NCBI GenBank assembly: GCA_965637545.1 | Contig: OZ281497.1 | Span: forward strand, 19,964,001 to 20,028,000 | Origin: Phallusia mammillata | Taxonomy: Eukaryota | Reading direction: 5' to 3' | Length of the DNA: 64,000 nucleotides | Shown: piece after piece, positions 1-36,400 of the stretch | Layout of the letters: each line of letters starts with the position of its first letter | How positions within the stretch are numbered: the first letter of the stretch is position 1 | Position numbers and translations under genes: made by a program | The notes under the pieces: generated by a model | Database searches by the model: none | Told to the model about the DNA's origin: nothing | What the model saw: only the letters and a program-made list of their open reading frames with translations

Positions 1-312
1 ACTACTAAATTTCAGGCCAGACGGTTCTAAATAACTAAACCGTCATGTCGTAATATTATATGTATCAACTAAGAGGGTCTTAACTATAGTATTATGATAT
101 TATAGTCTTTACAAACTTTACAAACTGTGAATACTGTAATAAAATCACAGTACGCCAGGCCCATTGGCGTCATACCGAATCAGCCGGTCACCAAGCATTC
201 ACCACACTATGAATACTGTAATAAAAAATCGAAATGCATGGAAAAAAACTTTTGGCTCATAAAACACATAAAATACATAAAATACAATTTTAATCAGTGT
301 AGCGGCCCAAAC

Positions 313-15300: not shown

Positions 15301-17618
15301 AACCATCCTACACAAACAAATAGCAAAACTTAAGCGACAATTCTAAGATCTTCAATGGGCCAATTGCCACCAGTTTAAGAGGAAACTCATCAAAGTGACT
15401 TCCAAGAGTCAAGTGGTAACACTTCAACATTCTTTCATGCTCTTACATTCTAACTCAGTTAATTTGTAGTTATCGAAAAGTGCAAATGGCACAAAGTAAT
15501 GAAACCAATTGAATAGTGATACAACGTTGGTATCACTGTTAATAAATATAAAAGTTACACAATTTGTAGACAATAATATTATTTTGTTAAAATTATATAA
15601 AAAACTTGGTTTAGAACATCTATATATGTCGTTTTTGATAGAAACTTAGAACACAAGAAATTTAATGTAGTTCAGCCTTTTCCTTTTTACATATTCATAT
15701 GCATCTTTACAATGTACCTTATTCTTTGCATGAACATCAGCATGGTAGTCAATCAGAGAAATGCACAAGTCACTGCTGGGAATGCTGGCAGCAAGATGGA
15801 GGGCAGTGTTGCCATTGATGTCCGATAAATTGACATCAGCATCTTTAAATCAAATGTTATGTTCAGGTCAAAGAAATTATAAAATGTATTTTGTGACAAA
15901 ACTGTGCTGTGTTGTACATATTACACAAGAAGGGGCTACTTGCTATTACACATAACTCTAACTGGAAAATATTCTTCTGAAAAACGTATACATATGTGTA
16001 CACTATGAAAACATATATATTCATGTTTCAAAAGCAGGTGAGCATGTGTTTAAATTTAATTGAAATTGAAATGAAGAATTAAGATATAGTTTAGCATCAC
16101 TTTACAATCGCTATTCTGTTCCCATTTGCTTTTCTTAAAGAAGGAATAAAAATTGTGTTTCTAAAAATCTTGCTATACAAGACAGATAGGTTCAGTTTTG
16201 TAAACGTAGAATGCCATCAAAAAAAGATTATGGAAACCAATTTATTTTTATAGTATATATGTGATCCTATCTTGTTTGTCATTTTGTTTTTTCCTGAGAT
16301 ATTTTGAACATATAAATCTAGTTAGAAAAAAGTGAAAACAAAGTTTGGCAAGATCAAAGAAGCAGACAGATAAAGTTTTCATTTATTTAAAGCACTGTGT
16401 TCATTGTAACATACCCAGGATAAACGTGAAATATAAAGGGATAAAAAACACTCCATCTTAAAAATAATGTGTTGGGTATTATTAGTGATGGGACGATACC
16501 AGGTTTTGAAGCGAGTACCGATACCGAGTACGAGTACCACATGTATATACCTTCGATACCGAGTACCAAGTACTTAAGTACAGTGTTGTACTTAGTTGTA
16601 TATCACCTGCTAATTTATCTGCCATGGCCGGCATACAGGCGTGCACACACACATGCAGAAAAAAGTAATCTCCATAAGATAGCAAAAAAATACGTAACCT
16701 GGCGGAACTTTTTCCCAAATTTGTACTGTCCGAGGCACAAAGTTTCCAGTGTTCTTATAGTGTAAATCGGCCTTCGGTACTCGCACGTTGGTATCGAAAA
16801 CTGAGACAAAATATTTCGATACCGAGTACGAGTATCGATACCACTGAAATCGTTCGATACCATCGATACCGAGTACCGGGTACCCGTCCCATCACTAGGT
16901 ATTATTGTTCCTACCTTTCTGTAGGAGAACATTCATGCAGTTGTAAAATTGACACTGAACTAAAATCATGAGTGGGGAGCGTTTGTCATTGTCACACAGA
17001 TTAAGGTTGCAACCATGTTGACCAGCAAGCATGATGATTGCATCTATCTTTCCATTGCTACAAGCAAGATGAAGCGGTGTCCTACATGCATAAAGTAACA
17101 AATACATCATTTTAAATCCTATTGTGATACTTTTTTTAAGAGCTGTAGGTGGGCCAAGCTAAAAAATGCAATCTTGAAACCAAAATTGTGGCCAAAAACC
17201 AAAAGTGCCCGTCTGGAATCATTAATTAGGGCCAAAACCTAAAATTGTAAGTCTGAAACTCAGCCTAAACCAGATCCCAATGGTAGATTTATCAACATAA
17301 AATTCTGAAAAAAACGTAAAGCCGAATGAAGCCTCTTATGTTCATACGTTTTGAACTGCATTGAAAAGTACAACTAAACTAACAGCACTGCTTCTTTTAA
17401 CAAATCAGTTTTACTTGCCTGTTTTCTTTGTCAAGCTGATTAACATCTCCTTTTTTGAGAAGAGATTTCAACTTTGATAAATCTCCTGTGAAAGCAGCTT
17501 TGTGGAGTTTGGTTAATTCCTTTTTAGTTTGAATGTTGTAGCCAGATTCTGATTTGCCACCGCTCGCTAAACTTCCAGTTTCCGAGGCGGATTTCTTCTT
17601 TTTGAAAAACCTCTTCAT
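313..17618 (-). CDS. ANKRD26: ANKRD26/CCDC144-like ankyrin-repeat and coiled-coil protein; multi-exon, 3' end runs off the left edge
   Basis: ATG 17618 (MKRFFKKKK...TKLHKAAFTGDLSKLKSLLKKGDVNQLDKENR) splices to 17081-16915 (TPLHLACSNG..DNDKRSPLM). Further ankyrin exons lie near 15842-15718, 15.3 kb and 14.1 kb, then 13749-13556. Acidic S(P)WDSE motifs recur at 13.1, 12.6, 12.0 and 10.35 kb. An E/K/R-rich exon at 9256-9824 is followed by many coiled-coil exons down to 477-313, whose donor points out of the window. Junctions checked by hand are in phase. Confidence 0.85.
3094..3261. mobile_element. Tc1/mariner-pogo-like MITE (168 bp)
   Basis: Imperfect TIRs CAGTAAGCCTTGGTTAA / CAGTAAACCTCGGTTAA; TA on the left flank only. 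Confidence 0.55.
4485..4693. repeat. Old degenerate MITE-like family (other copies ~17140-17280, ~22860-23077, ~37765-37951, ~49361-49517)
   Basis: Shared terminus variants CCGCTTACAACTCTG / CAGACTTGTAAGCG and GGGCC/CGGGC motifs; no TSD recoverable. Confidence 0.45.
7005..7323. mobile_element. hAT MITE (319 bp)
   Basis: TIR CAGGGGTGGGCAACC at both ends; perfect 8-bp TSD GTTTAACT; GCGGCCC subterminal motifs. Confidence 0.9.
16483..16897. mobile_element. hAT (Ac/Tip100-like) MITE (415 bp)
   Basis: TIR TAGTGATGGGACG at both ends; perfect 8-bp TSD GGTATTAT; repeated (C)GATACCGAGTAC subterminal motifs. Confidence 0.9.
17082..17418 (-). other. GC-AG intron (first coding intron of the ANKRD26-like gene)
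   Basis: AG|GCAAGT at 17419/17418 is the donor that gives DKENR-TPLHLAC in frame with the phase-2 acceptor at 17081. Confidence 0.8.
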
Positions 17619-18255
17619 TTTGACATCGACAATATACAAGAATTATAAAGATACGGTTACAAGCAACACACTACTTCTAAAATCAAATAGAACCTGAAAA
17701 AAGGAAACTGTAAAAAATTGCTGGTGATATTTGATGATTAAGTAACATAACAAACAAATTTCAATTGAATTATAGTGATTACAGCCGTGTAACCAAAACG
17801 ATCCTACAAAATTGCAGGGTAAAATCATAAACTAACAAATACAATTTAAAAATAATTTATGCAACCTTATATCATATTAACTGTGGTATGTCTTAAAAAC
17901 ATGATTAGCTTTTTAAATTATTGATAACACTGCTACATAATTAGGCAAATTTGACCTATCGCAGGAAGCAACATTTAATACATTAAATCTTTATCTCTAG
18001 GATTTAACATGTTAGAAACAAATATGGTACCCCATAGGTTCTAAAATCAAAATGTTGGGTTTACAATCATGCATCTGTAAATATACATTCAAAAGATTTG
18101 CTTACACAAGCTGTGATTCCCTAATATCTTGATTTTTTTGTTTTTTAACAAACACATAAAAATAGCTACTTTAGATTGGTGATTATACATTGAGCAACAA
18201 AGCACAATGAGTGTCAAAAGTCACCAATTCAGGAATGAAAGAAGGCAATCTAAAC

Positions 18256-18750: not shown

Positions 18751-21487
18751 GTCTAAACAAAGCACACTGGAAGCAAAATTGAAACACAAGCAGTAGCAAA
18801 GGAGCAGCTGGATTTTTTTGATTTTTACAGGAGACATAAGGTCTCGATTTTTTCTCTGTTTCTTGAGGATCTTAAACAAAATATATTAAAAAAAAATGTA
18901 CAACAAGTCATAATCATTGACATTTCTGTGAACATTGACTGGTGGTCTAATCTAAACTAAAGCCAATGTTTATAAATTTTGTTGCAGAAAAAGGTAATTA
19001 ACACAAAGTAGTAATTACTACTAGGGACTTTGGTATCATGCATATTCAACACCACTTTCCAAACTACTGGCAGCTTTTTTCAAAGGGGAACTGTGGTGGA
19101 AAAAAATCTAAGAAATGTAAACAAACAAACCAACCTTAAATTAATATGGTTGGTCCAAAAAAAAATTACTGGAAAAACTTTGCATAGACAACACTAAGAA
19201 ATGCTTATCTGATATGCTACACTAAATACTGTAAGTAATAAAAAAGGAAAACAATCAACACAATAAAACTTCGTTGGACGTTTATCGACAAAACGTCTTA
19301 ACTAATTTAAAATACTTTATCTGCACTTCTGCATAGTACAAACATCGATCTTATTGCTCGACAACATGTTAAGAAGTTAAAGGAAACTTCCTAAAGACTG
19401 CAGCTCACAAAATCCACAAAACAAACATAAGAGACGCCCACTGTCCACTTCAAACCATTTCAAGAATTTAAATGACTCTCAGAAGAAAACTATTTTAAAA
19501 TCCTCTACCAGAGAATATTTAGAAAAAATATAAACAACTTTTGAGCATAATTATTGATTATCACGACATAAAAAAATAATACTAAATTTTTATGCAATTA
19601 ATTTAAATACCTATTTGTTCTAATTTTAAAAGATAACGATTTCATACACCAAAAAACACTCCACTAGTTTGGATTATCTGAAAAGAACGTTTGGTCCAAA
19701 AGGGGAATTACCCCATAAGCCTTTCGCAGTTCACAAAATATGCTGGTGAAAGTTTGTTCGTCTGGAAACAAAGACAATTGTCTCATTTTAGTGAAACTAC
19801 TGTCAGACAAAAACAAAACTCATCATGAGAATTTGCGCATGTTCCGCTTTGTTTTCATATAAAATCGTCTTGCGTCTGACCTGGGCTGCTGGACAAAAAT
19901 ATAGGCTATCATTGGCGCAACAATAACCTGTGACTTCCAACTTGCATGAAATCTTTGTAGGCTACCATGAGCACTTTGTTGTTTGTTCGAAAATCCGTTT
20001 TAATACTGAAAGTAGACGAAGCCAGCAGAAAACGTCAACAGTCAACATTTCCGACAGCGAACAATAGGAGAGTCGTAAATTTACGAAAACACAGTTTACA
20101 CAAAGACTGGACAAGTTCACTTGACAAAAACTTGGGACATCGAACCATTGGAAGTAAGAAAAGTGACAAAAATCCATTGTTTTGCACCGACGACATAAGC
20201 CTTTAGTAGGCTATATGTTTGTTAGGGATGAAATCATTTAAAAATCACACATAGAATGTTGGTTTACCATTAAAATATAATCGGAACTTATTGAATACCA
20301 AGATAGTGTTTTAAAAATTAAAAAGGCACCGTGTATGGAGTTGTCTTTTTCCAAGTGTCGGCTATTGCATGAAAACATAGTTAACCAGCTTATTTGCATA
20401 AAACAACGGGCACAAAGCAAGACAACGAAGAGCATAGAACAAACACAAAGAAGACAACACGACAAAAGTACAAGAAAGAATTCGCAGCAAATCGCGCAAA
20501 TGTTTGGTGATTTTGAACATAGCGATTTAATCTGTAACATAAAATCACCGTAAAAAGACACGTTTATTTAGGCGACAAAGGTTTAAACTTCTTCCAGATC
20601 TAACCGTGCGCCATGCTTGGACCATGTGCCGTAGAAAAACTCAATTTGTTTGAAAATTATGTAGAAGCGCAACGAAAAACAGAAAATGTTCCTATTGTAT
20701 GGGTGAAAATGTCAATTGACTTAATAAAGTAAAAGGTTGTTTAGGAAGACAACCCAGAAACGACGTTTTTGATTGCGAAACCCGTTGAAGTGCCACAGTG
20801 CAGGCCATGATGAGTTTAAAAGTGAAAAATTACTTGTACAAAATTGCAGTAACGTGCACATTACAATGGAATAAGTGACCTCAAGTCGCGCCAAAGGCTG
20901 TCAGTTCATTTTCAACTCAAAATAAACCCCTGGTACGGATCAACGTGCAAATTCTGAGATGAACATAGAGGAGTAAGAAAAGATCATAACATTAGCCGTT
21001 GCTTAACAAAAATAAAACCAGGTAACTTAGAGGATCGTTTTCAAATGGTATGCGTTTGAGCATAGCTTGCAGACCTATACTAGAAACGGCAAAAGTTTTT
21101 TTAATAGCGCTATTCGACCTATACTGACCTACGAAACATCGAGCGCACAACACTCATGTGCAGAAGAATTCAACTAAAAAAGGGTCCGACAAAGTGCAGC
21201 GCATCGTAACGTGCATTAAACTGCACAGACACAAAAAGCATTTGCCAAGAAAATGCTCCGTAGCGAACCCTAGCGGCTAAAAGAGATGAACAGGATGCAT
21301 TCAAAATAAATTTGACATAAATCAGGGCGCCCACGTTGCAATTTCGGCATGTAGCAACACGAAACGTTGTAAACAAATGCTTTTGACGCGCAAACAAAAC
21401 AGGCGGCGACGCAAAAAAAGAAACATTAACAAAGCACATGTATAGTATAGTTATTGAATTTCATTGGCATTACGAAAAGTTAATGCA

Positions 21488-24400
21488 TCAGTGCGACCCC
21501 GAGAACGACGGCCCGGCTGCGAGAGTAATTGACGGTTGCTCGTTTATTTCATCCAACGATTCAACGACGGCTTTGCAGTAGAAGCACTCTTTGCTGGTCA
21601 TCATTTGTTGTTTAATGCACGTTCTGCAGCGAAGAGCATAAATTACAGTTTTTTCTTTGAAGATATTTTAGAAAACTTTACCCCAAAGGCAGCATTATTT
21701 CAACGCCACTTCCGCTTCCAATAAGGTTTCAAATAATTGTTTGTTGAGTTAGGCTATACACAAATAAAGCAAACCGGGCGTGAAGGATAAAACGTATATG
21801 AAAAGCGTTTCTATAAATTACAGAATCTTTCGTTAATTAAAAAAATCGGAAATAGTAGTTCATGTCCATATTAGATTTACAAAAAATGCGATTGTCAATG
21901 ATCATGTTGCCTGTTGGATATCTAATTGCGAACACTTACAAAAAGGTAGAAGTTCATAAAACTACTGTTGTGCTGTAAGACAGACCCACTTTAAAAACCA
22001 CTGTTCTAAAAAGTTAAAATGTATCTATAAGCACTCACTTGCAGGATGTGTGTTGACAGGGATTAAACACAACTGAGACAAGGTTAGCGTAGCAGATCGT
22101 ACACAGGTTGTCTTCGTCCATTGGCTCCTGCAAATCACGGGACGTTTAAGGAAGCCGCATCCATTACAGGTAAATGCATCCCAGCAACTAAAGCCTAGTC
22201 TATAAGTACTGTTGGTCGCGGTACACGCCACGTTAAATAAGTTTGCTGTTTTGGGCAACAGGAAATTCATAGTGCAACATTATCGAGTGAAGGGTACCAC
22301 ATCAAATGTGTATTTGTAATAGTTTTGAGTGTACAGACAAGTTATTTTCGCGCTAGTATGACTTTATCGTAACAATGGCCTGTGGTGCCAGATTGCGCCA
22401 AATCACTTACAAACCAACGGAGAAGAAAGTGCTCAGAAAATGTAAAAACAAAACAAATGTTTGACATTCAAAGCAAAGGGGTAATGAGTAAAGGTTAGTT
22501 GGTTGGTAAACATAGTTAAAAGCCAACTTACCTCAACGGTGGTCACTGCGTTCTTTTTCTCTCGGCGTAAAAAGCGTATGGCGTCACGGAGCAAGTTGAT
22601 TTCGTCATCCATCACTTCTTCGTCTGAAACAATGCATTTTCACGTTAAAACAGTAAGTGCTATTTGCACACGGAATAATATCTTTGTTAAGTTACAAAAA
22701 TATACTTTATTAAAAGTTAACAAACAAGACGAGCTTATTGAGAGCGAGACACTTAAACACGGTCTTTGTTCTATGGGTTAGTGGTTTATGCTCTGATGAT
22801 TCGGAATATAGGTAACTGCAGTTATAAATTGCGTGTTCAAAGCAGTTCACCACTACGTTAAATGTTGTAAGACGGGCCTTTTCGGTTGGTATTCCGGGTT
22901 CGAGTTTCAATAAAATTTGGGCCTGTCTTCACACTGGGAGTCATTTTACCTATTAGCACCAAGTTTCTGGCCTAATTCCAGCTTTGATTAAAAACCTGGT
23001 TTGGGTGGCGTAAGGGGTTTGTACTTTAGGGTTTGGGCCGGACTCGGGCAACATTTTCAGGCCGGCTTACACCTCTGGTTTGAAGGCTGATATTGCGTTT
23101 GTTACAACCTTCCTTTCTCACTGCTTGCTTTATGTTGTTATAATTAGCTTCAGCACAAACTTGAGTTTGTTGTGCAGTTGTGTGTTTAGTTTTTTTAACA
23201 AATCATTATTTACTTACATTCTTGTAGGGAGACAAATTTCTTTTCTTTTGATCTTGTGTAAGGGATGGTGACTCCTCTTGGCACCACGCAACTGTCATCC
23301 TTCTCTTCCTCCTGCATGTTGAGAAGGAAACCGACAGATTCCATGCTAAAGCTGGCATCAGCCAGAAGCTTTTTCACGGTACGATCAGCCCTGGTAAAAA
23401 ATACAAGTTTAGTGCACAAGGTTTCAGTGTTGTTGGACTTTCAATTTCAAACGGCTACTCTAGTTTGTGTTGTCGTGACCAAAAAGAGTAAACAAATCAA
23501 GTGAAATTGTACAGTGCAACAATCCATTGTTAACCAAAGAGTTTTTATAGAACGATCTGCTGACATGTTGTTTCGTGGGGCAAACCAAAGTAAGCACTAA
23601 AACAACAATAATAGGAGTCTAATATTTTACCTAAATCGTAACAAATACAAAATTTCACACTATAGACCTAAACCGTGCGAAAATTAAATATTATGGAAAA
23701 GGCACGCCGTCTACTTTTCAAACTTCTATCGAAAACAACAGCTAAACGACTGCATGGGCAATAAATAATTAAATTCGGACATGAAACGCGACGCATATAA
23801 TTCCCCGGCTCAGATCATTTGTAACAAAAAATGAACTCTGAAAAAAAAAGTATTTTTAGACCTAAAATATAAAGAGTTATTATTGTTTGAAGCAAAAAAG
23901 TTCAAAATTCAGTATTATTATTAAAAGATACAAGTCATAGGAATTGGAAAACACTAGAAGCTTCTGGAAGCATTCTACATGAACGTAACCAAACTACCGT
24001 CAACACCTGCTGCGAGAGTTACTTATTTCAGTGTGATGTTACACTTCATGACTTCAAAAAGTCAGCGCGTGCTGGGGATCACGCAAAACTAAAAGTCACC
24101 GACCAAGCATCTCAAAATGCCGCAAAACAAATAACCTCAATCGAGAAACGCACAAAGTACTAAGGCTGGATATTTTAAGCTGCATCAAGACTTCTTTACG
24201 TGTGGAACATTGTACGGCTGGCCGGTGTGAGCAGCATGGATTTCCGTGTTAATTGGGCTTATGATTGGCGTTGTTACCACTTATTTTGACGTGCTAGGCA
24301 TGCAGGCATTAAAATTTGATGGAGGGACGTTTCTCATGCATCGCGCAGACGGTTCGCATTTTTGTGAGATAAAGCTAGGGTAGTTGACTGGCTTCGTATG

Positions 24401-27400
24401 TATTGGAATTGCAGCAGATATAGGTATGTCGCGGTGTACATAAAAAACGCAAACTTGAAAAGCAGTTTGTTTTCTTTTTTGTGGCTGATTTTGGTAGACG
24501 TTAAAATGGCTGCAGGGTAGTGTGTGGTTGGAAATAAAATCTGAAGTCTCAACCGCACTTGACTGCACCGTATTCGCATAATGCATACATTACAGGGTGC
24601 CTAGTTTCAAAGATAACAGTCACGAAGGCGCAAGGCAGTTATTAAAACTATAGATTTGCGTAAAACTGTGCCATGTATGTAGTTTGTTCAATATACAGGC
24701 AAATAACCAAATTACGTTTAAGCATGTAATTCACATAGTTTCATGGTAGTAATTTGTATACGACCACAGATTTAGCACTGTCGGTATTTGTACAAAAAGT
24801 TGTTTTTACATCTGCTATATAACTGTGTCAGACATTATCGGGTAGCTTTGACATGCAAGCAATCAACGAAAGGTGACAGGTGTGATGGATAGTGGAAGAA
24901 CTAAAGCAGGTAGCATAACTGTGAAGTCGACAAGCGCCAATAAATATTCATGGCAAATTGATCTGCGATGTCAGATAACTCGATGGTTCGTTACATTTTG
25001 ATCAGTTCTGATATTTGGCAGGCAGTGAGTCAAGGGGAAATGTGATACTCTATGATTTTGGCCAACTGGGTCGAAAATCAGACTATTTTTACGAGCAAAT
25101 ACACCAGTAGGCTTGTTTGTGCCCCCAAGAGGGTAGTTACCGTGACAGCACGTGATTTGAGCCTAATTATTGCGCGGTGGTACAGAAAATCTATAAAGAT
25201 AAGGGCCAATTGATGTTTTGCAGCGCTGCGAGGTTAACAAGCTAATTTACTTTCCACAGATGGAACTATAGGTAACTTACTATACGCTGCATGAGATGCA
25301 CATCTGATTGGATTAAGCACAGACAGAGTTAAAGAGCAAATGTCGACCACAATTGAAGCACCTCTTCGATTGTAAGTATAATGTGGATTTTTTTTACTTC
25401 TCATTGGCAGAATTTAAAACTAATTTATAACCAACGGCACTTTGGCATTATGCATCGAAGTGTAGCAAATAATAACCCAAATTACTCTTTTTGAAATGGC
25501 AAGTAAAAGGCAGAATTCAAACAGAAGTATATCAGGCCAATACAGAATTACTTCAAACTATTGATTTTTGCGACTTCCTCAGACGGCTGTGAAATAGAAT
25601 GTTTTGACTCTGTTACGTAAGACCTAAGCTGAGATATGAATTATGCCAGCTCGTCACTAATAAGTTATTTCACTGAACAGGGCCAATCTCACCGCAAACA
25701 CCAACTCATCATCACAAGTTCAAGGATTTCATCCTGGGTTCACGACTCTCATATCATGTGGCCTGCTCGTGGTCATTCTCGTGATTTACATGTGGTTCGA
25801 GCCCAAACTCACGAAGTGCTTCGCCAAAAAGGAACGTGTACAGTTCGACCCCGAACCTTCAACACATGAAAACCGAACAGTCGATCCGAAAAACCGAATG
25901 CGATACGTTTGGACAAGTCCAAGATGCGCGGAGCCGGCTTCGGCGCACAACAAACACGAGTTATGGACGCCTGATCGGGCATTAGTACGAGAAGGCGGTG
26001 CGGTGGTAAGAGTAAACGATTACACTTCGATAGTGGAGTCCCGCCACACAACCCCGCTTGTGTTAGTGACACCACCGGTTGGAGGAAATTAGTTCTGCAA
26101 ATTCCGACAACGCAGATATACGCAACGCCTGACGTTTGAACTTTTGAACAATAACAGCTCTTGTTTTTTTATGTATTTCTGTCGCAGTGAAGCCGAGGTA
26201 TTGTGTAAATGCTCAAAATAAACGTACTTTAGAGTGTTAGGAAACTGGGGTAAAAGCATGTTAAAAACTGTGCAAAGCGTCAGGTTGTTGATTGTAACGC
26301 TTGGCTTGGCGTAAAGTGAACCGTAAACGCAATTACACGGATCACTCGCTACACGAAGCGTATTCAGGAAATCACGAGATCAAAGATCGAAAGTTTTGCT
26401 CAAGGCAAAGTTGCTTGTTCGATACGATGATTCAGAAAAACTTGTACACAGAGAAAATAATTTCAAAGATTTAGGCATACACTGCCGAAAGTAGATAGTA
26501 ATATGTATAAGTAACCAAACACTCATGAAAGTAGCAACTAACATGCAGTTTGTTCGATTAGCAGTTACAGAACACTGCCTTGACAGTTTTACAGCCGAAA
26601 AAAGGCCATAAACCGTGTTCTCTTTCCATCAAGAGTTGATTGAAAATTTTGAACTTGGAATCTAATTGTTATCAGACTCCAGTGCACTGATCCAACAAAA
26701 CGAATTCATCACCAGTCACCGATGAAACCAACAACTTGAACACAAAAAAATATTAATGCGATAGAAAATGCAATACGGGCCAGAGTCTTACACAACGACA
26801 ATATTGCTACCTTCAACTGCATTTACGGTGTTTGACTAATTCAATTAGCCACGCGCAAGTGATTCTTGTACATAATTTATTACGACAATGTGAAAACAGC
26901 AATGTAGTAAGCTTGTTAATAATTTATGAGAATTAGAGTTCACCGGAAATACAGGCATAGTTGGGCTGGTTTCAATTAAATTACAATAACAAGTGCTGCA
27001 TTTCTTTCAGGTTAGCATGTGGGGTGAGAATTTCGGGCTAATTTTTGTTTCAAACATTTTGTACAGTTAAAAGACAATGAAACAGTAGGTGTTAACAGCT
27101 GTTTTTTTACTATGAACTTTGAAACTCTATATAGAAGTCAAATTGTAAACAATTGAAGACCCATGTATTTTGCAATTATTTGTAATACAGCGACCTTATA
27201 ACAAATTAAAGCAAACAGCAAAGAAAGATACAAATCAGCAAACTTGAGATGTTACGGACGATAAGAAATAACCAGGTTAAGTAGGAGATTAAGAAAGGGC
27301 ACAAAGAGTGCGAACTGCCATTGAAGCGCTGACCAAGAATCCTAACACAAATCCAACACCCCTTGACGGTTGAGGAAACGCACCAATGAAAGCGATCGAA

Positions 27401-30400
27401 TGCCAAACACGTGACCAGAAAAATATCTGCACATAAAAACCGATGTAAGGTGTCCAAAAGAGTGAAATACATACATTAGTTTGTAAAATTTTTATTCAAT
27501 GATTTTCATACACTGGCATTTTTTGCTTTATGATTTATGGCATGGAAACCCAGGCTTGAAAAAAGCTCAAACCTTTGCACGCAATTTTATGGACAATTAC
27601 ACAATGCTTAGCCTACAGACAAATACAAACCTTAAAATGCCAAAGTGCAGTAGACGCATCAGGTCCAGTAGAAAGATACAAAAGTCCCAGCAGAACGAAG
27701 GGAACAACATTTTCCAGATCGTTTAAATGCGCGCGCCTTGCTCGCTCAACATCATCGTTTGGCCGAAGCAATTCCTTTTGTTTTTCCTTGTCGTTTGGCG
27801 CCACCACGCGGGCATCCTCGGGTGAGGATAAGGACGAAGTTTTGACGCGAAAATAGCTGGTGACCAGAGACATTGCCATTGTTTTGCATACAACGAGCGT
27901 GGCGTATCGCACAAAGCCCGCAAAAGCTTCGTTGTCAAGTGTAAAGAAAGACATACTACTGACTTAAGTGATGCTATGCAATGCTAACTCTGCAATATTA
28001 AAGCACAAAATATTGAAAAAGTAGATCTCCTTGAAAGCAGAAAATTAGAACTCGGATTCTGTCGCCTCAAAAGTGCCTTCGGCGGACAAGAGTCCAGTAT
28101 TTATAGCCTAAACCTAAGACAAGTCCACGTTAGCATGACAACGCAAAAAAATGCGTGTCAATAATTGCGCCATTCGTTGAAATTTTTGCTTCAGCCCAAT
28201 AACCTCAACAGGTTTCATCATGCACAAACTTCAAACAATTGCAAGAGTTTCACATCACGTTAAAGATAGCAGAAAATACAAGACAAACAGAACAGCTTAC
28301 CACGTCGCTTACTACACGGTTCGGCAAACAACCAATCCGCAAGGTTTTCTCGTGAAGAGAGCTTACCTATATTGACACAAATGAATCTACCGGCGCAAAA
28401 GCCGACACGGTGAATGATCTACAACGGGAGCTGTTTGGTCACGTGAAACACGCACCCACCGTGACTATGCATATTTGTGAGCTGATGCCCTCCACGCGTC
28501 AGTGATGACGAAACGAGAGCTCTTGTCATTTTGGATGACGCAACCCGATACAATTTTCGTAAAGTTGGTTGAAATGTTCGGTAATTACGCAATGTATGGA
28601 AATTCTCAAATCAAATTCACCTTTTTATTTTTAAGTGTAATCTTCTTGCAGACAATTTTGACAAGAATTAACTCCCCCACAAAAACAAGCACTTTTAAAA
28701 GACGCGCCAATTTTATTTGTCAACCAAGCATCGGCAACGAAAAGCCAGAAATGTTTACAGTAACAACAGAAGGAAGCGTAGCATCACGGTCGGCGGCGTT
28801 TGTTAAGAATTCATGTCGCTTTGACCAGATTAATACAACGCCATAAGAATGTGAAGCAGCATGGACACGTTGATACCAAAGCCGGAAGCAAAGCCGAGCA
28901 ATCGAATGGGTTGCGGCAAAGCATAGATGTACGCAATTGTGTGAATGACTCGAGCGCCAAGGAAGATCTGCAAACAACAGACAATATATTACCCAACACA
29001 AAATAACTATGAATAACTTACAAAAAACACCTTCCTACTGGATGTACATAAGTACGATTTTTAACCTTTAGTGAACTTACGACTTATATGCTTTGTGTTG
29101 CATCAAATATTTAACAGTTTAAACCAATTTCAACGAGCATTTATTAGTTTGAATGTTACGAAGTACTGACAGTGCCTTAGGTTTCGTAGTTGGCAGTCAT
29201 GTGAAAGAATATGATGCCTTTGCCTACCTGGAAATGGAAGACAGCGCCTGAAAACTCCGGACCGGTTGCAACATACAACAATGCAATCAGAACAAAAGGT
29301 AAAACGTTCTCCAAGTCGTTAAGATGGCTTCTTCGTATCTACACAAAGCAAAGTGCATTAGAGTTTGGGGTACTAAAAATTCAAACAGAATGGACAAGGA
29401 CCTGACCCACTTACTCTTTCAATGACTGCATTGGATTGAAGCATCACTTTGTGTTTTTCCTTGCTTTTCTCCATAAATACTGCATCTTCAGGAGTTGGAA
29501 TTGACTTGAGTGTAACACGATAGTACACAGTGATGATAGACATCAATACGGTTTTGGCAAGCGCCAAGGCACTATACCACACATACTCCTTAAACAACTT
29601 GTTTTCCATCGAAAGTGTCGACATCTTGGTTTTGACAGTCAAGAAGGTTGCCTATACCCACTGCAGAGATAATGCTTTTAATAGCTTGCGACAATTGACT
29701 GATTTAATTACCCGTCTGGCCCTTAGCTACGTAGTTAAACTACAATCAATTTGGTGTCAGCGTTCTCTTAACTTTTGAATGAGGGAAGACTATTGGCAAC
29801 CCGAATATATTACACTTACGTCTGTTCTGACGTTTATAACATGACACGCTTTTACTTTTTGCAAAATAATTCTGATTGCAGTTTTTTTCTACTTTTTAAA
29901 AACCACGCCAAATTCAGTACTTGAATTTCGACATTACGCACAATCTATGGCCTACTTTCATAAATTCACATCACAAATCATGGAGTCATGATTTCCATCA
30001 ACTCAATAACGCCAAAATCCTAGTCACGAATATCTAATTTCAACGCAGTTTGGACTTTGCTATGTGCAAGGCTGTTTCTGTACAAGCGTCTCACAGCACA
30101 AAGCCTCGATACCCGATACGGTCTGTCAATCTCGAGTCATTTCCCGTAGAAATCGCTGAATGTAGGCTGGAGAGGCCTTAAGCTGCGTTGTAGTGTTTAA
30201 GGCATAATGACCAAGCAGTTTTCTGATTGGTTGTAGGAAAAAAAGCTGTATTAAGTGGCTACTGCCAACTGAAGTCGGACAAGAGTTTTTATGCCGACGC
30301 ATTGAAAGTTTCATACCAAGACTAAAATGCAACAAACTGAACAATATCAGACCCTCCAACAGACAGCATGGTCATTGACCCTCACTGTTACTGTAACAGA

Positions 30401-33400
30401 ATCAGTCAATGCATTTACATGGAATAAACATATATTTCGCCTAATTGACATCTTTAATTCCTTATTCAAATAGAACAAAACTTTAGAAAAAGTATTACAC
30501 ATGCATATGTAGGAGAGTTATACTTGTATTTACACCATATACAGCATCAATTAAAACCAACAAAGTACTTGCACATTGGTCTATTTAGAGAACAGAAGTC
30601 ATAATACAAAATGCCATGTAGCAGCATACACCATAGCCAGCCATAAAAGTAATTGACCTTGCCGGTTGTGGAACAGCATTCAGATACACAATGGTGTGCA
30701 AGATACGACTCACTGAAAAGACCTGAAACAAATTTTACATTAATTCACTACTGAAAGCACAACTTGTACACATACAACACACCCGAAAAAGCAGCAATGC
30801 AGTTCCATAACTAGGGTTGGTTCCAATGTACAGAAGTGCCATTAATAGAAAAACATATATGTTTTCCATATCGTTCAGATGACATCGACGAACCTAAAGC
30901 ATATTAGGTTAATTAAATCGAGATAATTTATGAATCAATTATATGTTTGTAGGTACTAACGCAAGTTGCAGCAAATACTTCAAATAAATTGAAGTTAAGT
31001 TATAAACATGTCTTTTCGGTGAAGAGGTCAAATAAGACATAAGTTTTAGTAAGTAGTTTAACTTATCGGTGTGTGCGTAACCTAATTGTTTCAAGTCAAC
31101 TTAACATCTCAGCACAATTATGTTGCATGTAATGCTTTGGTGCAATTTCTAATGCATTTACAACAAAGTTCTCACCCTCTCCACGTTTTCATTTGCCACC
31201 AGCGCTTCTTTCCTTGATTCACGGTCCTTATTCAAAACGTCCTCCGACGACACAAACGAATTGTTGGCAAATCTTTTTGTCGTCGTATACAGTGCTAATG
31301 CCATCATCTTGACCAACACAATACACCCATGCAACATTAACGCTGCAAAAGTGTCATTTTCCAACGAGTACGGACTGCCAGCCATTCTGTATGATTATAC
31401 TCCACTTTCTGATCGACCACAATACAAAACCGCGAGGTCAAACCAAACGTACAGCGCTGGTAGGTATATCTCAGCTGAAAAAAATGCCCCAGGCTTATAA
31501 GTTACGTCACTCCGGCATGTTCCGGTAAAAAACGAGATTTGAAGCATAACGTTTTATGTCTCACGAACTAAGTCACCGACATAAGACTCGCCCCAACATT
31601 CCATTCAAACACGGGAAATTTGCCAAAAAAGAGTGTTGGCAAACAAACGAAAAGTTTTGTTTCAAAATTGTTTGTCAATAATATTTTTCTATGAAAAAGA
31701 GCATCAAAAGCCTACGACACCCGGTATTCCCAGGCGGTCACCCATCCAAGTACTGACCGGGCCCGACGTTGCTTAACTTCCCAGATCGGACGAGATGGGG
31801 TGTTCTCAACGTGGTATGGTCGTAGGCGATTGCTCGCGCGCAATGATGCTTTTTGTAGGGCAAACAATCTTATCTAGTCTCACACAATTTGATCACCGAA
31901 AATTCGTTTATTTGCGGAAAAACAAACGTCGATGCATGACCATTTTAGAACTGAAATTATATACATTTTTGAATATAATCCTAACTTCTACGTTGCAATT
32001 AAGCATAGACTGGTCCCGAAATGTTTTATTGTAAAAGGGATCTCAGAATCGAAAATGCCATGTAACCACACACTCCAAATCCGGCCATGAAACACAGACC
32101 TCTTGCCGGTTGTGGAACTGCATTAACGTACACTATGGTGTGCAAGATACGACTCACAGTGAAGATCTGAAACATAATTGTTGTTAAACAGTAACGATAG
32201 TTTATTGTTTATTTCAAATAGCAACACAAGTTCAATGCGAAATAGTCCATTATAGTCAAACAGCTACTGTATAATGTCTTGAAGAACATGTTGCAAGTAG
32301 AAATCTTACTGAGTTTGAGTTAAACATTCACTTAAACCACACGGTAAACTCTTATCTGTGGTTAAGTTTACCAGCAGCCAAGCAACGCACCCGGAAAAGA
32401 AGCAATGCAGTTTCATAGGCAGGGTTGGTTCCAATGTACAGAAGTGACATTAACACAAAAAGATAAACGTTTTCCATATCATTCAGGTGACATCGCCGTA
32501 CCTAAAACAAATAAGACTTATCGAATCGAGATCATAACTGTTAAGTCACTGCAAACCACACCATTTTAAACCAAAAAGTAACCCTTGGGAGAGTGTTTTT
32601 GTAGAATAAGGTAGAATATTATCTTTAGTGTGATCTAGCAACTAACTAAGCAAATCGGTGAAATGCTAATCAGACATTATAATTTAGAAGTTTTTGTCAA
32701 ATTACCTTTAACCCAAACAAACCGTTCATGCTACGTTTTTGCTGTAACTTATACTTTACATTAACATCTTACCCTTTCCACATTCTCATTTGGCACGAGT
32801 GCTCGTTTTCGTACTTCAGGATCGGAAGAAATGCCTGCAACATCCTCTGACGACAAAAACGTTTTGCTCCCTATTCTTTTTACAGTCGTTAATAAGACCA
32901 CTGCCATCATCTTGACCAATACAATGCACCCGTACAGCAAAAATGCCGAGAAAGTGTCATTTTCTAACGAGTAAGGACTACCTGCCATCTTGTACGCTTG
33001 CTTTCACGTTCTGAATGAGTATTCGACGAAACCGCTTAGTTAAACCGAACGTTTGCTACTTGGTTACTTATTAACACCAGCTGAAAGCTCGGCTTGAGTA
33101 TGACTAGGTGTTTTGCCGGCGTGTTCCGGTTCAAATAGTGTAGCCTACAGCGGGCGAAACCTCACAAAGGAACCGTGAAGCACAACATAGGCTACACCTG
33201 ACTCATCCACGCGAGACGCCATTCCATGTGAGGAAAATTCACGGAAAAAAGAAGCGGCAGAACAGAACAGGTCGTACCTTTCACGCTACCTGTTTAGACA
33301 ACTTCCCATTATCCATGTACCTTTGTTTAGAATTCCACCAATTGTGTTGTAAAGACGATGGGCATGGATTGGGCCACTGGAGCAAAATGTCCAGCTCGCC

Positions 33401-36400
33401 CTCGATTTGAACGCGAAATGTACAGTTTGTTTAAATGTGCGCATTACCACGTCAGAATTCGGTTGCAGGTAGAGTTATTCAAATGCCAATTGACTGAAAC
33501 CGATTCACTGGTTCAAAAGGTCAAACAGTGGTGTTTAATAATGCAAATACCACTTTCAAAACTTTTGTGGAAATGCTTTGCTGGGTCTGAGCTTGTAAAT
33601 CAGTCAAGGTAAACAAAAAACAACGGTTCTGTTTCCAAAAGTAAAAGCCTACGACACCCGGTATTCCCAGGCGGTCACCCATCCAAGTACTGACCGGGCC
33701 CGACGTTGCTTAACTTCCCAGATCGGACGAGATGGGGTGTTCTCAACGTGGTATGGTCGTAGGCAACTGCTCGCGCGCAATTACGCTTTATATGGGGCGA
33801 GATTTACCAACGGCACTACTAATATAATGAAAAAACAGAAACAGTGCTTTCACAAACGAATTTAGACTGGAGTAGTTTTATTTGTTGAACGAATAAACAA
33901 TTATGTGTTCCCATTGATTGAATTGTAATCTTGTGCAACTTTAATGAAGACAAGTAATGTTCTAATGTTGCAATTGGACGCAATTTCACGACATTTTCGT
34001 TCAAAGTAGAGTTTTGAAAATTGAAAATGCCATGTAGCCGCACACCCCGAAACCGGCAATAAAGCACAGACCCCTTGCTGGTTGTGGAACTGCATTAACA
34101 TAGACTACGGTGTGCAAAATACGGCTCACAGTGAAGATCTGAAAAAAACACATATATTTATTGCACTTTTTCACCGCACAAAAGACAAGTGCATTTTATA
34201 CCACATTACATACCCTGAAAAGCAGCAATGCAGTCGCATAGGTAGGGTTTGTACCGATGTACAGGATTGACATAAGCACGAAAAGGTAAACGTTCTCCAT
34301 ATCGTTACGGTGACATCGGCGCACCTAAGAAGCGTTGAAAACATAGAGTTAGAAATAAAAACCAATAAATACCTCTCAGAGCCTTAACCTACCCTCTCAA
34401 CATTCTCATTAGGCACCAAAGCGCGTTTCCGTTTCTCAGGGTCTTTTACATCTTCTGATGAGATAACTGCCTTGTTCTCTTTTAATTGTTGTTAAAGGAA
34501 CGACTACCATCATCTTGACCAACACAATGCAACAATACAGCAGGAACGCTTTGAAGGTGTCATTTTCTAGCGAGTACGGACTGCCTTCCATCTTGCCTGC
34601 TGAGTTTGCTTTGCCTAAACTTAATGTAAATGTGCAGAAACTACCCAACGCTACGCTTAGTACACTAGCTCGACATTTAGTCACTGATTAATATCCATCG
34701 CAACTAGTAGGTGGAAGGTTGTTTCTCACAGACAGTTTTCACTGATCTAGCTTTTTCTGCGCTCGAGGTTACCAAATCAGAACACAGTACAATGGCACAG
34801 TAAACTGAAATCAGCCCATACATAAACAGATCTGTGCAAAAAATAATGCACGCTATTTTATCTACGACTGTTTTAAATCCATGGACAACCTAGTCTCTAT
34901 TAGATATCTGTTATAAGTTGTTAGGTAGCCTACAAACTTAGATACATACATACCAACTACAGGTAAAGCAGGACTTACCCGTTCGACGTTCTCGTTGGGC
35001 AAAAATGCCTTTCTGCGTTCCTCAGGGTCTGGGCCAATACGATACAAATCCTCTTTGGAACTGACCGACTTGTTTTTAAAACGCTTTATAGTAGTGAGTG
35101 TTGTCATCAACATGGTCTTGACCAGTAATATGGCACCGTAGAGCAGAAAGGCGGCAAAAGTTTCGTTTTCTAAACTATAAGGTTTCATGGCGCTTGTCCT
35201 ACTTGCAACTAACTGAACACGCTATTAATGTGAGAATGTTTTGGGTTCCTCACTTACACATGTTCAATCGTCCAAAGGGCATTTTTTTCGTGTGCAAATA
35301 TTGACATTTACGCTGCCTTGCTGGGTGAAAACGCCATTCTTACATCATTTTTAAGCAGCTCCAAGCACGTGACAGGAACATAAAATACGTTCACAAGATC
35401 CAAAAACTTGTCCAACAAAATAGACCGTGAGGCAGTTTGAAAAAAAGCAAAAGCCTACGACACCCGGTATTCCCAGGCGGTCACCCATCCAAGTACTGAC
35501 CGGGCCCGACGTTGCTTAACTTCCCAGATCGGACGAGATGGGGTGTTCTCAACGTGGTATGGTCGTAGGCGATTGCTCGCGCGTAATGACGCTTCTTATA
35601 GGGACGTAACAACGAGATATTGCATTTTAGGTTTCATACCCCTTTTGAATACTCTGTAGTCTGTACAAGTGCTACTGCCCACAATTAAAAAGGACAACAG
35701 AATGCGAAAGCAGGCCTAAAACATCTGCTTGAAACACCAAGCAGTCTTTTTAGTCAATATGTAAATGTAGACATAAAAGTGATCAATATTCTTTTGTTTC
35801 AATGCCTTTTGACAAAAGGTCAATGAGCCAATTTCACAAACGAACCAAACTCAGGACAAACAATTCAGACTAGGTTCTTTTGGTCACGACAACACAAAGT
35901 ATGGGTATCAAAGTAAAAATATTGGACCTGATCATAAAGACACTCACCACACTTTGTTTTCTTGCTTCACAAGCTTCAGAATAATCCCAGCTATGGACGT
36001 CATCAGTGGGTAATGCTGAACGCTGCTTAGTCCTGCAAGACATTAACCTCAGATAGTAAAATAGTTCAGTAACCTCCCACTGTTATTAATGTGGCAATGG
36101 CGTTCAATTTCTCATCAAATCTTAGCCTTGGTTACATTCACTTGATCCAGAGGTTTAAAATCAGGGAAAAGTATCTCAAAAACAGTAACTTTGACCCACC
36201 TTAAGTCCAAAATAGTTATACAGTTATACATTGTGACACTGAAAACAAGGCCTACAACATAGAACGTATATCTGTAGACTTTGTTTTTCAATAGTTTTTT
36301 TATGTTTTTTTATGAAAAGAAATGCATAGCGATGAATTTTATCGTCGAGGAGGGGTAAACCGAAACTAAAAAAGGTTAAAAGTTTTTATTACTGGTCAAC

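What the first reader, a model, noticed from the sequence alone, without database searches (positions are those of the whole stretch)
24236..26092. AMIGO-like gene with a decayed LRR/Ig ectodomain but an intact TM and cytoplasmic exon
Exon 25681-26092 is open for 136 codons. It keeps AMIGO-like hallmarks: an NxT sequon, F-x-x-GFTTL-x-x-C...V...Y, RVQFDPEP (vs KRVVFLEP; also an RVxF PP1-docking-like motif) and a terminal TPLV. Upstream, colinear remnants of LRRNT, LRRs, LRRCT (HG[NP]LICDCQITRWF) and Ig carry many stops and indels. An in-frame ATG at 25340, in the last Ig strand, would yield a ~147-aa ectodomain-less protein. The asymmetric decay suggests selection kept a truncated AMIGO. Vertebrate AMIGOs also act as Kv2 channel auxiliary subunits, so a non-adhesive role is conceivable (inference).
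Basis: partly seen in the sequence, partly recalled or inferred. Interest (0 to 1): 0.85.

Follow-up and report, generated by a model that had tools for sequence, protein, structure and literature searches.

The report
Small membrane-protein gene nested in RNF123
A real, expressed two-exon gene for a 147-residue single-pass membrane protein lies antisense in an RNF123 intron of a sea-squirt genome, at the place where vertebrates keep AMIGO3; the "decayed AMIGO ectodomain" said to lie upstream of it is not detectable.

Summary
RNA contigs from four runs (three studies) show the predicted GT..AG junction 25371>25681. One contig carries the 16-nt ascidian spliced leader joined at 25260. The mature mRNA is therefore leader + 25260-25371 + 25681 to about 26223. 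An in-frame stop at 25292 forces translation to start at ATG 25340, giving 147 aa.

The product has a short N-terminus with two glycosylation sequons, one confident helix, and a disordered tail. A second ascidian has an open 195-codon exon at the same place, between the last MAPEG gene and the same RNF123 exon, antisense, with the same acceptor phase. Only the HPG[FI]TTL[IV]SC...LVIY helix and a basic R-x-x-F stretch are conserved (tblastn E 4e-7).

The decayed LRR/Ig ectodomain is not supported:
- 26 upstream reading-frame pieces gave no LRR, LRRNT, LRRCT or Ig match in Pfam.
- LRR-motif count is zero.
- There is no RNA coverage at 23500-25099.
- Nothing upstream is conserved, and the second species has no ectodomain either.

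No search found a significant AMIGO match. AMIGO descent remains plausible (about 45%) because vertebrate AMIGO3 is nested antisense in RNF123, here confirmed as host, and because of motif likeness that is mostly recalled from memory. Moderately interesting. The scan's other notes on this place cover this same window's DNA, not other DNA.

The parts
23392..25259 (+). Non-coding DNA upstream of the gene, presumably promoter plus outron.
   Evidence: No RNA depth at 23500-25099. No LRR or Ig Pfam match in 26 pieces. Zero LRR motifs. Single copy in the genome. No similarity to the other species' upstream DNA.
25258..25259 (+). AG acceptor for spliced-leader trans-splicing.
   Evidence: The run X3 contig continues 5' of 25258 with TACGGG + ATTCTATTTGAATA(AG). 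This is the published 16-nt Ciona leader. Leader+GT occurs 3179 times in this genome against 0 for the control.
25260..25371 (+). Exon 1. It carries an 80-nt leader region with three short upstream ORFs, an in-frame TGA at 25292-25294, the start codon at 25340, and the first 10 2/3 codons.
   Evidence: RNA contigs of X1 and X3 cover 25251/25258-25371. ORF listing of the modelled mRNA.
25372..25680 (+). Cis-spliced intron, GT..AG, lying after the second base of a codon.
   Evidence: Joint 25371>25681 in four runs from three studies. The other species has an acceptor in the same phase.
25681..26092 (+). Exon 2 coding part: 136 codons plus the stop. It encodes the glycosylation sequons, the transmembrane helix and the cytoplasmic tail.
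   Evidence: Translation. Codon-usage score +0.166 bit per codon, best of six frames and within the range of true exons of the window. Ortholog found by tblastn at E 4e-7.
25733..25798 (+). Transmembrane helix, the only strongly conserved segment.
   Evidence: AlphaFold helix at residues 18-39 of the exon-2 translation, pLDDT 84-89. Kyte-Doolittle maximum 2.33. tblastx E 3.6e-5 to the second species. Nucleotide differences by codon position are 9/4/14.
26093..26223 (+). 3' UTR as far as the contigs reach. AATAAA lies at 26217-26222.
   Evidence: Contigs end at 26158-26223. Sequence read.
23218..23391 (-). First RNF123 exon downstream of the host intron, in the host gene's direction.
   Evidence: CT..AC joints and contigs. 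The spliced 3' exons encode a C-terminal RING finger. The orthologous exon lies at L016:18964-19140.
35947..36042 (-). Open frame holding the last RNF123 exon before the host intron. The intron spans about 23392-35947 and also holds about six MAPEG genes and three 5S rRNA genes.
   Evidence: Its ortholog lies at L013:7313-7399. TPR_RNF123 Pfam matches on 37315-37539 and 38474-38692. MAPEG match. 5S rRNA matches.

Best explanation
This is a genuine protein-coding gene of an ascidian (sea squirt). It lies on the strand opposite to RNF123, inside a 12.5-kb intron near that gene's 3' end.

Shown:
- The primary transcript loses its 5' part by spliced-leader trans-splicing at 25259/25260.
- One internal intron (25372-25680) is removed.
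- The mature mRNA is about 670 nt.

Inferred:
- Ribosomes pass three very short upstream ORFs and start at AUG 25340.
- They make a 147-residue protein that inserts with its N-terminus outside and C-terminus inside. There is no signal peptide, the helix acts as a signal anchor, and the net positive charge lies on the C-terminal flank.
- The protein has a 30-residue extracellular stub with two N-glycosylation sequons, one helix, and a roughly 95-residue disordered tail.

Selection acts mainly on the helix (polar face T-T..S-C, then LVIY) and on the basic R-[VM]-x-F stretch just inside the membrane. The rest of the tail is free to change. The likeliest mode of action is therefore association within the membrane with a partner protein, as a small auxiliary subunit, with short linear motifs in the tail.

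The DNA upstream is ordinary non-coding sequence, not a decaying ectodomain. By position the gene may descend from an ancestral AMIGO gene nested in RNF123 that lost its LRR-Ig ectodomain before these two ascidian lineages split. I put that step at about 45%. It is inferred, not shown.
For: Transcript:
- GT..AG joint 25371>25681 in four runs from three studies; no depth at 23500-25099.
- Leader letters on the X3 contig equal the published Ciona leader (PMC1488885).
- The leader is encoded thousands of times in this genome, including 553-bp tandem arrays.

Coding:
- 142 open codons. Chance is about 2e-4 per reading-frame start at the local stop-codon frequency.
- Codon score is the best of six frames and lies in the range of true exons.
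- The in-frame stop at 25292 fixes the start at 25340.

Conservation, on contig ena:ERZ21736675:ctg13961l, walked over loci L010-L016:
- RNF123 exons are colinear, followed by four MAPEG genes. An antisense open exon of 195 codons (chance about 9e-6) lies before the exon orthologous to 23218-23391.
- tblastn E 4e-7 over residues 28-66. Same acceptor phase. An NLT sequon is kept.
- The helix is the only tblastx match in about 3 kb against 6.7 kb.
- Differences by codon position are 9/4/14.

Fold: one confident helix, the rest below pLDDT 50.

Host and position:
- SPRY domain, TPR_RNF123 at 38.5 bits, C-terminal RING.
- RNF123/AMIGO3 is a listed opposite-strand nested pair in vertebrates (PMC3933685).
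- In AMIGOs the transmembrane region is among the most conserved parts (PMC2173769).
Against: - There is no proof of translation.
- Three upstream AUGs precede the start, the first in a strong context.
- The spliced leader is seen in one contig of one run only. The X1 contig runs 9 nt past the acceptor, so an untrimmed form also exists.
- The runs are labelled RNA only by guess, although their spliced contigs show that they are RNA.
- Only one other species could be compared, and its exon 1 and start codon were not found.
- No homolog was found in any protein library.
- AMIGO genes of vertebrates have no intron in the coding part (my own knowledge), whereas this gene has one.
- The same intron hosts many other genes, so it is a general 'nest'. 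This weakens the argument from position.
Confidence: 0.8

Rival explanations
1. First reader's model. This is a recently truncated AMIGO gene whose LRRNT-LRR-LRRCT-Ig coding sequence still lies, pseudogenised but recognisable and colinear, in 24236-25340, while selection kept the transmembrane and cytoplasmic exon.
For: The position is antisense in RNF123, like AMIGO3. One LRRCT-like string appears if two frames are joined. GC is slightly raised at 24000-24400.
Against: No LRR or Ig Pfam match at E<=10 in any of 26 pieces. Zero LxxLxLxxNxL motifs, which is below background. No RNA there. The distant second species has the same gene without an ectodomain and no LRR signal in 5.8 kb upstream. 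Any loss is therefore old, and neutral remains would be erased. Nothing upstream is conserved.
Confidence: 0.04
2. A tunicate-specific small membrane-protein gene unrelated to AMIGO. Its place in RNF123 is a coincidence, in an intron that collects genes.
For: No significant similarity to anything in 1.84 billion representatives, Pfam, PDB or the Atlas. There is no LRR, Ig or signal peptide. An intron lies in the coding part. The same intron holds about six MAPEG genes and three 5S genes. The RVQFDPEP likeness to AMIGO2's RVVFLEPLKD shrinks to R-M-R-F in the second species. By my rough estimate, a 5-of-8 match among roughly 80,000 possible window pairs is expected by chance.
Against: The strand, the host gene and the 3'-proximal position are the same as for AMIGO3. 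The topology is single-pass with a sequon before the helix. The residues kept between the two ascidians (TTL[IV]SC...LVIY, S-x-x-TTP) resemble what I recall of the AMIGO1 helix (YTTLVGC...LIYLYL) and its C-terminal SDTPIVV. That rests on memory and is untested.
Confidence: 0.42
3. A spliced non-coding RNA, for example a by-product of an intronic antisense promoter, whose 147-codon ORF is fortuitous.
For: Three upstream AUGs. Modest contig depth. No protein homologs.
Against: The open frame is kept in two distant species, at 142 and 195 codons, with the same phase. Conservation is at the protein level and only in the helix, with a codon-position pattern of 9/4/14. Codon usage is coding-like in that frame alone.
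Confidence: 0.07

Closest known systems
Vertebrate AMIGO3 (AMIGO family, LRR-Ig adhesion proteins and Kv2 auxiliary subunits)
   Same: It is nested on the opposite strand inside RNF123 (PMC3933685). It is a single-pass membrane protein with a glycosylation sequon just outside the helix and a tail without known domains. The helix is the best conserved part, as reported for AMIGOs (PMC2173769). One species has an RV.F..EP string resembling AMIGO2 RVVFLEPLKD (PMC4639856).
   Different: It has no signal peptide, no LRRNT, no six LRRs, no LRRCT and no Ig domain. It is 147 aa against about 500. An intron lies in the coding part. The mRNA is trans-spliced. There is no statistically significant sequence match. 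The RV.F motif lies about 12 residues after the helix rather than about 45, and it is not kept in the second ascidian.
Small single-pass auxiliary subunits of channels and pumps (KCNE, FXYD, small integral membrane proteins)
   Same: Similar size, one helix, a short glycosylated N-terminus outside the membrane, conservation concentrated in the helix, and a disordered tail.
   Different: There is no sequence or Pfam relation to any of them. No partner is known. This is an analogy of form only.
Spliced-leader trans-spliced mRNAs of ascidians
   Same: The same 16-nt leader as Ciona (PMC1488885), joined at an AG acceptor. Leader genes are abundant in the genome.
   Different: Nothing unusual, except that the acceptor is directly followed by an AUG that opens only a 3-codon ORF.

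Membership tests
AMIGO family (definition of Kuja-Panula et al. 2003, PMC2173769) | N-terminal signal sequence (type I topology) | tested here: not met
   The N-terminus is MSTTIEAPLRLANLT..., which is not hydrophobic. The only hydrophobic stretch is the helix at residues 30-48.
AMIGO family (definition of Kuja-Panula et al. 2003, PMC2173769) | LRRNT, six LRRs (LX2LXLX2NX(L/I)...) and LRRCT in the ectodomain | tested here: not met
   They are absent from the mRNA. The upstream DNA gives no Pfam LRR, LRRNT or LRRCT match at E<=10 and has zero motif hits. The second species also lacks them.
AMIGO family (definition of Kuja-Panula et al. 2003, PMC2173769) | One Ig domain next to the membrane | tested here: not met
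   No Ig-family Pfam match in any upstream piece or in exon 1.
AMIGO family (definition of Kuja-Panula et al. 2003, PMC2173769) | Single transmembrane helix followed by a cytosolic tail without known domains | tested here: met
   One helix with pLDDT 84-89, and a tail below 50. No Pfam domain.
AMIGO family (definition of Kuja-Panula et al. 2003, PMC2173769) | Sequence similarity of helix and tail to AMIGO1-3 | tested here: inconclusive
   No hit at E<=0.001 in 1.84 billion representatives and none at E<=10 in PDB. These thresholds are too strict for about 40 conserved residues. No AMIGO sequence could be fetched for a direct comparison. The likeness of the helix rests on memory only (one search found no such chain in the PDB).
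AMIGO family (definition of Kuja-Panula et al. 2003, PMC2173769) | Conserved tail motif RVVFLEPLKD (binds the PDK1 PH domain; PMC4639856) | tested here: inconclusive
   The window has RVQFDPEP. The second ascidian has only RMRFSRG. The distance from the helix differs from that in AMIGO2.
AMIGO3 by genomic position | Nested on the opposite strand within RNF123 | tested here: met
   The host carries SPRY, TPR_RNF123 and a C-terminal RING. Host joints are CT..AC and the small gene's joint is GT..AG. The vertebrate pair is listed in PMC3933685. Whether it is the homologous intron was not testable.
Spliced-leader trans-spliced mRNA (ascidian) | Genome-encoded 16-nt leader at the 5' end of the mRNA, joined at an AG acceptor and absent from the local DNA | tested here: met
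   Loose letters on the X3 contig. They are not in the window. Leader+GT occurs 3179 times in the genome against 0 for the control. The leader is published for Ciona. Only one contig shows it.

The most novel reading that the evidence does not exclude
The gene is the ascidian descendant of the single pre-vertebrate AMIGO gene, already nested antisense in RNF123 in the common ancestor of tunicates and vertebrates. It has shed the whole LRR-Ig adhesion ectodomain and kept only the helix and juxtamembrane core. That would show that this core has a function of its own that does not depend on adhesion, for example as a Kv2/Shab-type channel auxiliary subunit. It would also date the RNF123-AMIGO nesting to more than 500 million years.
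Probability: 0.4. Interest if true: 0.6.

Novelty: new variant of a known kind. Interest (0 to 1): 0.42.

Why it matters
If the AMIGO link holds, this is a natural deletion experiment. An adhesion molecule has been reduced to its membrane helix and a short tail, and kept that way across ascidians. That points to the helix as carrier of an adhesion-independent function, such as the channel-subunit role known for AMIGO1. It would also show that a host-and-nested gene pair can outlast the loss of most of the nested gene.

If the link fails, it is one more unannotated, lineage-restricted small membrane protein. That is useful for annotation but not surprising.

In either case the result corrects the reading of the upstream DNA and gives an experimentally backed gene model, with leader acceptor, intron, start codon and stop.

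Tried and rejected
Searches with the exon-2 protein, all blank or only generic:
- Pfam and PDB.
- ESM Atlas: only generic single-pass proteins, at or below 0.85.
- phmmer against 1.84 billion representatives: 0 hits.
- Word-indexed search of 5.8 billion proteins at E<=10: 0 hits.
- Own genome, six frames: only itself.

Searches with the two-species profile:
- PDB: nothing relevant.
- JGI metagenome contigs: 196 pattern matches, none confirmed.

Dead ends in the related species:
- The closer relative seen in JGI contigs (84% identity in one RNF123 exon) could not be used. Its contigs end 8 kb short of the locus.
- A 511-aa antisense ORF in the second species looked AMIGO-sized but is a translated minisatellite.
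- A 142-aa antisense ORF at L015:11298-11726 is unrelated.
- I looked for exon 1 in the second species (ATG plus a donor in the right phase) and found no good candidate.

Confirming RNF123 by Atlas or PDB gave only generic SPRY or helical-repeat hits. The family-specific Pfam model settled it.

No AMIGO protein sequence could be obtained:
- A text search for part of it found no paper.
- No frameshift-aware AMIGO-to-genome alignment and no direct AMIGO comparison could therefore be run.

No paper on AMIGO in tunicates or amphioxus was found. The upstream DNA is not a repeat. Rfam finds nothing in 23.4-26.3 kb.


Full report
**What is in the sequence.** The frame 25664-26089 is open for 142 codons and ends at a TAG at 26090-26092. 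From the AG acceptor at 25679-25680 it reads ANLTANTNSSSQVQGFHPGFTTLISCGLLVVILVIYMWFEPKLTKCFAKKERVQFDPEP...HTTPLVLVTPPVGGN. The exception is that TPLV is not terminal; nine residues follow it. ATG 25340 opens MSTTIEAPLR and is followed by a GTAAGT donor after 25371.

**The transcript.**
- I laid the assembled contigs of four runs from three studies on 20700-26699.
- All four runs show a joint 25371>25681 with GT..AG ends. This proves a spliced plus-strand RNA.
- The same contigs show the host gene's exons on the minus strand: up to 21623, 22039-22126, 22531-22623 and 23218-23391, with CT..AC joints.
- No contig covers 23500-25099, which is most of the supposed decayed ectodomain.
- Upstream of the joint the exon reaches 25258 (X3) or 25251 (X1).
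- The X3 contig then continues with 20 letters that are not in the window: TACGGG followed by ATTCTATTTGAATA, running into the genomic AG.
- ATTCTATTTGAATAAG is the published spliced leader of Ciona intestinalis (PMC1488885).
- Leader plus GT occurs 3179 times in this 240-Mb genome, against 0 for the reversed control. The copies include arrays with a 553-bp period.
- TACGGG is, from my own knowledge, the end of a template-switch cDNA oligo.
- The organism is therefore an ascidian. The mature mRNA is leader + 25260-25371 + 25681 to at least 26223, with AATAAA at 26217-26222, about 670 nt in all.
- The leader is seen in one contig only. X1 reads 9 nt past the acceptor, so untrimmed RNA also exists.

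**The reading frame.** In the frame fixed by exon 2, a TGA at 25292-25294 closes the frame inside exon 1. No upstream exon can therefore add protein. Translation must start at ATG 25340 (A at -3), giving 147 residues. Three short upstream ORFs of 3, 13 and 3 codons precede it, the first in a strong context. This is a caveat for translation.

**Evidence that the frame is coding.**
- Codon usage, scored against confident exons of the window, is +0.166 bit per codon in this frame. It is zero or negative in the other five frames. True exons here score 0.05-0.40.
- At the local stop frequency of 0.058, a 142-codon open frame has a chance of 2e-4 per start.

**The protein.**
- There is one hydrophobic stretch, GFTTLISCGLLVVILVIYM at residues 30-48, with Kyte-Doolittle mean 2.33.
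- Sequons NLT and NSS lie before it, and a positively charged flank (KLTKCFAKKER) lies after it.
- There is no N-terminal signal peptide. I infer an N-out/C-in signal-anchor topology.
- AlphaFold gives one helix with pLDDT 84-89 and nothing else above 50.

**The surroundings.**
- The host gene is RNF123. It has a SPRY domain at 52363-52644. TPR_RNF123 (PF25576) matches 37315-37539 at 38.5 bits and 38474-38692. The spliced last exons encode a C-terminal RING finger.
- Upstream of the host lies dystroglycan (a_DG1_N2).
- The host intron, about 23392-35947, also holds about six MAPEG genes on the host's strand and three of the six 5S rRNA genes found in RNF123 introns.
- In vertebrates RNF123/AMIGO3 is a listed opposite-strand nested pair, present in human and in coelacanth and/or zebrafish (PMC3933685).

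**Test of the decayed ectodomain.**
- I cut the three plus-strand frames of 23891-25427 into their 26 stop-free pieces of 21 residues or more and scanned each against Pfam at E<=10. No LRR, LRRNT, LRRCT, I-set or other Ig model appeared. The only hits were three unrelated ones at E 0.03-0.3.
- The AMIGO LRR core LX2LXLX2NX(L/I) (PMC2173769) occurs zero times on the plus strand of 24236-25371. The window-wide mean is 0.31 (strict) or 1.7 (loose) per equal length.
- The 'LRRCT' string needs two frames joined over an assumed deletion.
- The region is single-copy and has no Rfam match.

**A second species.**
- A 140-residue RNF123 exon piece found two unnamed exon-level ORFs in public assemblies.
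- One lies on a 483-kb contig, ena:ERZ21736675:ctg13961l. I walked along it in six steps.
- RNF123 exons are colinear with the window at 57-88% amino-acid identity. One of them carries a weak TPR_RNF123 hit on record.
- After the exon orthologous to 35947-36042 come four MAPEG genes.
- Before the exon orthologous to 23218-23391 (L016:18964-19140) there is an antisense match to the small protein: L016:13101-12991, residues 28-66, tblastn E 4e-7.
- It lies in a frame open for 195 codons, with a chance of about 9e-6.
- That frame begins at an acceptor (...tttgactttacag|G) in the same phase as the window's.
- It reads ...AVNLTTVHNHYEGMVHPGITTLVSCLIIALMLVIYLSMGSITSFIRRQRMRF....

**What is conserved between the two species.**
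- Shared features are an NLT sequon, HPG[FI]TTL[IV]SC, LVIY, a basic stretch with R-[VM]-x-F and, in the MAFFT alignment, S-x-x-TTP. The rest of the tail does not align.
- Between about 3 kb of the window and 6.7 kb of the other contig, the helix is the only tblastx match (E 3.6e-5). blastn finds nothing else.
- Over the 24-codon helix block, 12 residues are identical. Nucleotide differences fall 9/4/14 on codon positions 1/2/3. That is the pattern of a coding sequence under constraint.
- The 5.8 kb upstream in the second species holds no LRR or Ig-like ORF, LRR motifs only at background rate, and debris of a hAT-like transposon.
- Both species thus have the short form. If an ectodomain ever existed it was lost before they diverged. 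Their neutral DNA is unalignable, so no remnant should be readable today.

**Is it AMIGO?** No search gave a significant match. These tests have little power, however, for about 40 conserved residues.

Points in favour:
- The position and strand inside RNF123.
- The topology.
- The reported high conservation of the AMIGO helix (PMC2173769).
- RVQFDPEP against AMIGO2's PDK1-binding RVVFLEPLKD (PMC4639856).
- From my memory only, the AMIGO1 helix YTTLVGC...LIYLYL and its C-terminal SDTPIVV, which resemble the residues kept between the two ascidians.

Points against:
- Every ectodomain feature is missing, and there is an intron in the coding part.
- The RV.F..EP string is not kept in the second species and lies at a different distance from the helix.
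- By my rough estimate, a 5-of-8 match somewhere between tails is expected by chance.
- The intron is a general gene nest.

I could not bring any AMIGO sequence into the session, so the direct comparison remains undone. I put AMIGO descent at about 45%.

**Verdict.**
- It is wrong on the point that made it striking, the visible decaying ectodomain.

The feature is a previously unannotated, conserved ascidian small membrane-protein gene. It is possibly a radically reduced AMIGO.

Noticed in passing
window 27613-35188, minus strand: About six tandem MAPEG (MGST1-like) genes lie inside the same RNF123 intron, on the host's strand. First exons begin M..SPYSLENDTF; the Pfam MAPEG match has E 2.8e-13. 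The second ascidian has four at the same place, so the nested cluster is old.
   Followed up: partly
window 31709-31827, 33646-33764, 35452-35570, 38131-38249, 41038-41156, 44549-44667, minus strand: Six full-length 5S rRNA genes with identical scores (115.9 bits each) are scattered singly through RNF123 introns. All lie on the host's strand.
   Followed up: partly
window 56490-62000, minus strand: A dystroglycan gene (a_DG1_N2, E 4.8e-17, with a mucin-like and transmembrane exon) lies directly upstream of RNF123. From memory, DAG1 and RNF123 are also near each other on human 3p21.31, which would be old microsynteny.
   Followed up: no
own genome, G000:C3:11108338-11147465 and onward: Long tandem arrays with a 553-bp period each carry the spliced-leader sequence followed by GT. 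They are presumably the SL RNA gene arrays. There are 3179 copies genome-wide, many of them dispersed singly.
   Followed up: no
window 25260-25271: The trans-splice acceptor is followed at once by ATGGAACTATAG, a 3-codon ORF in a strong start context. Two further short upstream ORFs precede the main start. This may regulate translation.
   Followed up: no
L010:17220-18755, minus strand (equals L011:10615-12150): A 511-codon open frame in an RNF123 intron of the second ascidian is a translated minisatellite with a unit of about 36 residues (MGSYDLLHCFPTWDRTICCIVSRHGIVRFVALFPD). It gives spurious Pfam hits.
   Followed up: yes
window 1-17700, minus strand: A large gene with ankyrin repeats (13997-17642) and a long coiled-coil, glutamate/lysine-rich part (about 300-13000) lies downstream of RNF123. 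It was not identified further.
   Followed up: no
L016:15283-15495, minus strand, and L011:6738-7565: Transposon debris lies in the second species' RNF123 introns: a hAT-like ...YYSHCAMHCLNLS... fragment and a DDE_Tnp_4 ORF. An RVT_1 fragment lies at L012:2589-2966.
   Followed up: no
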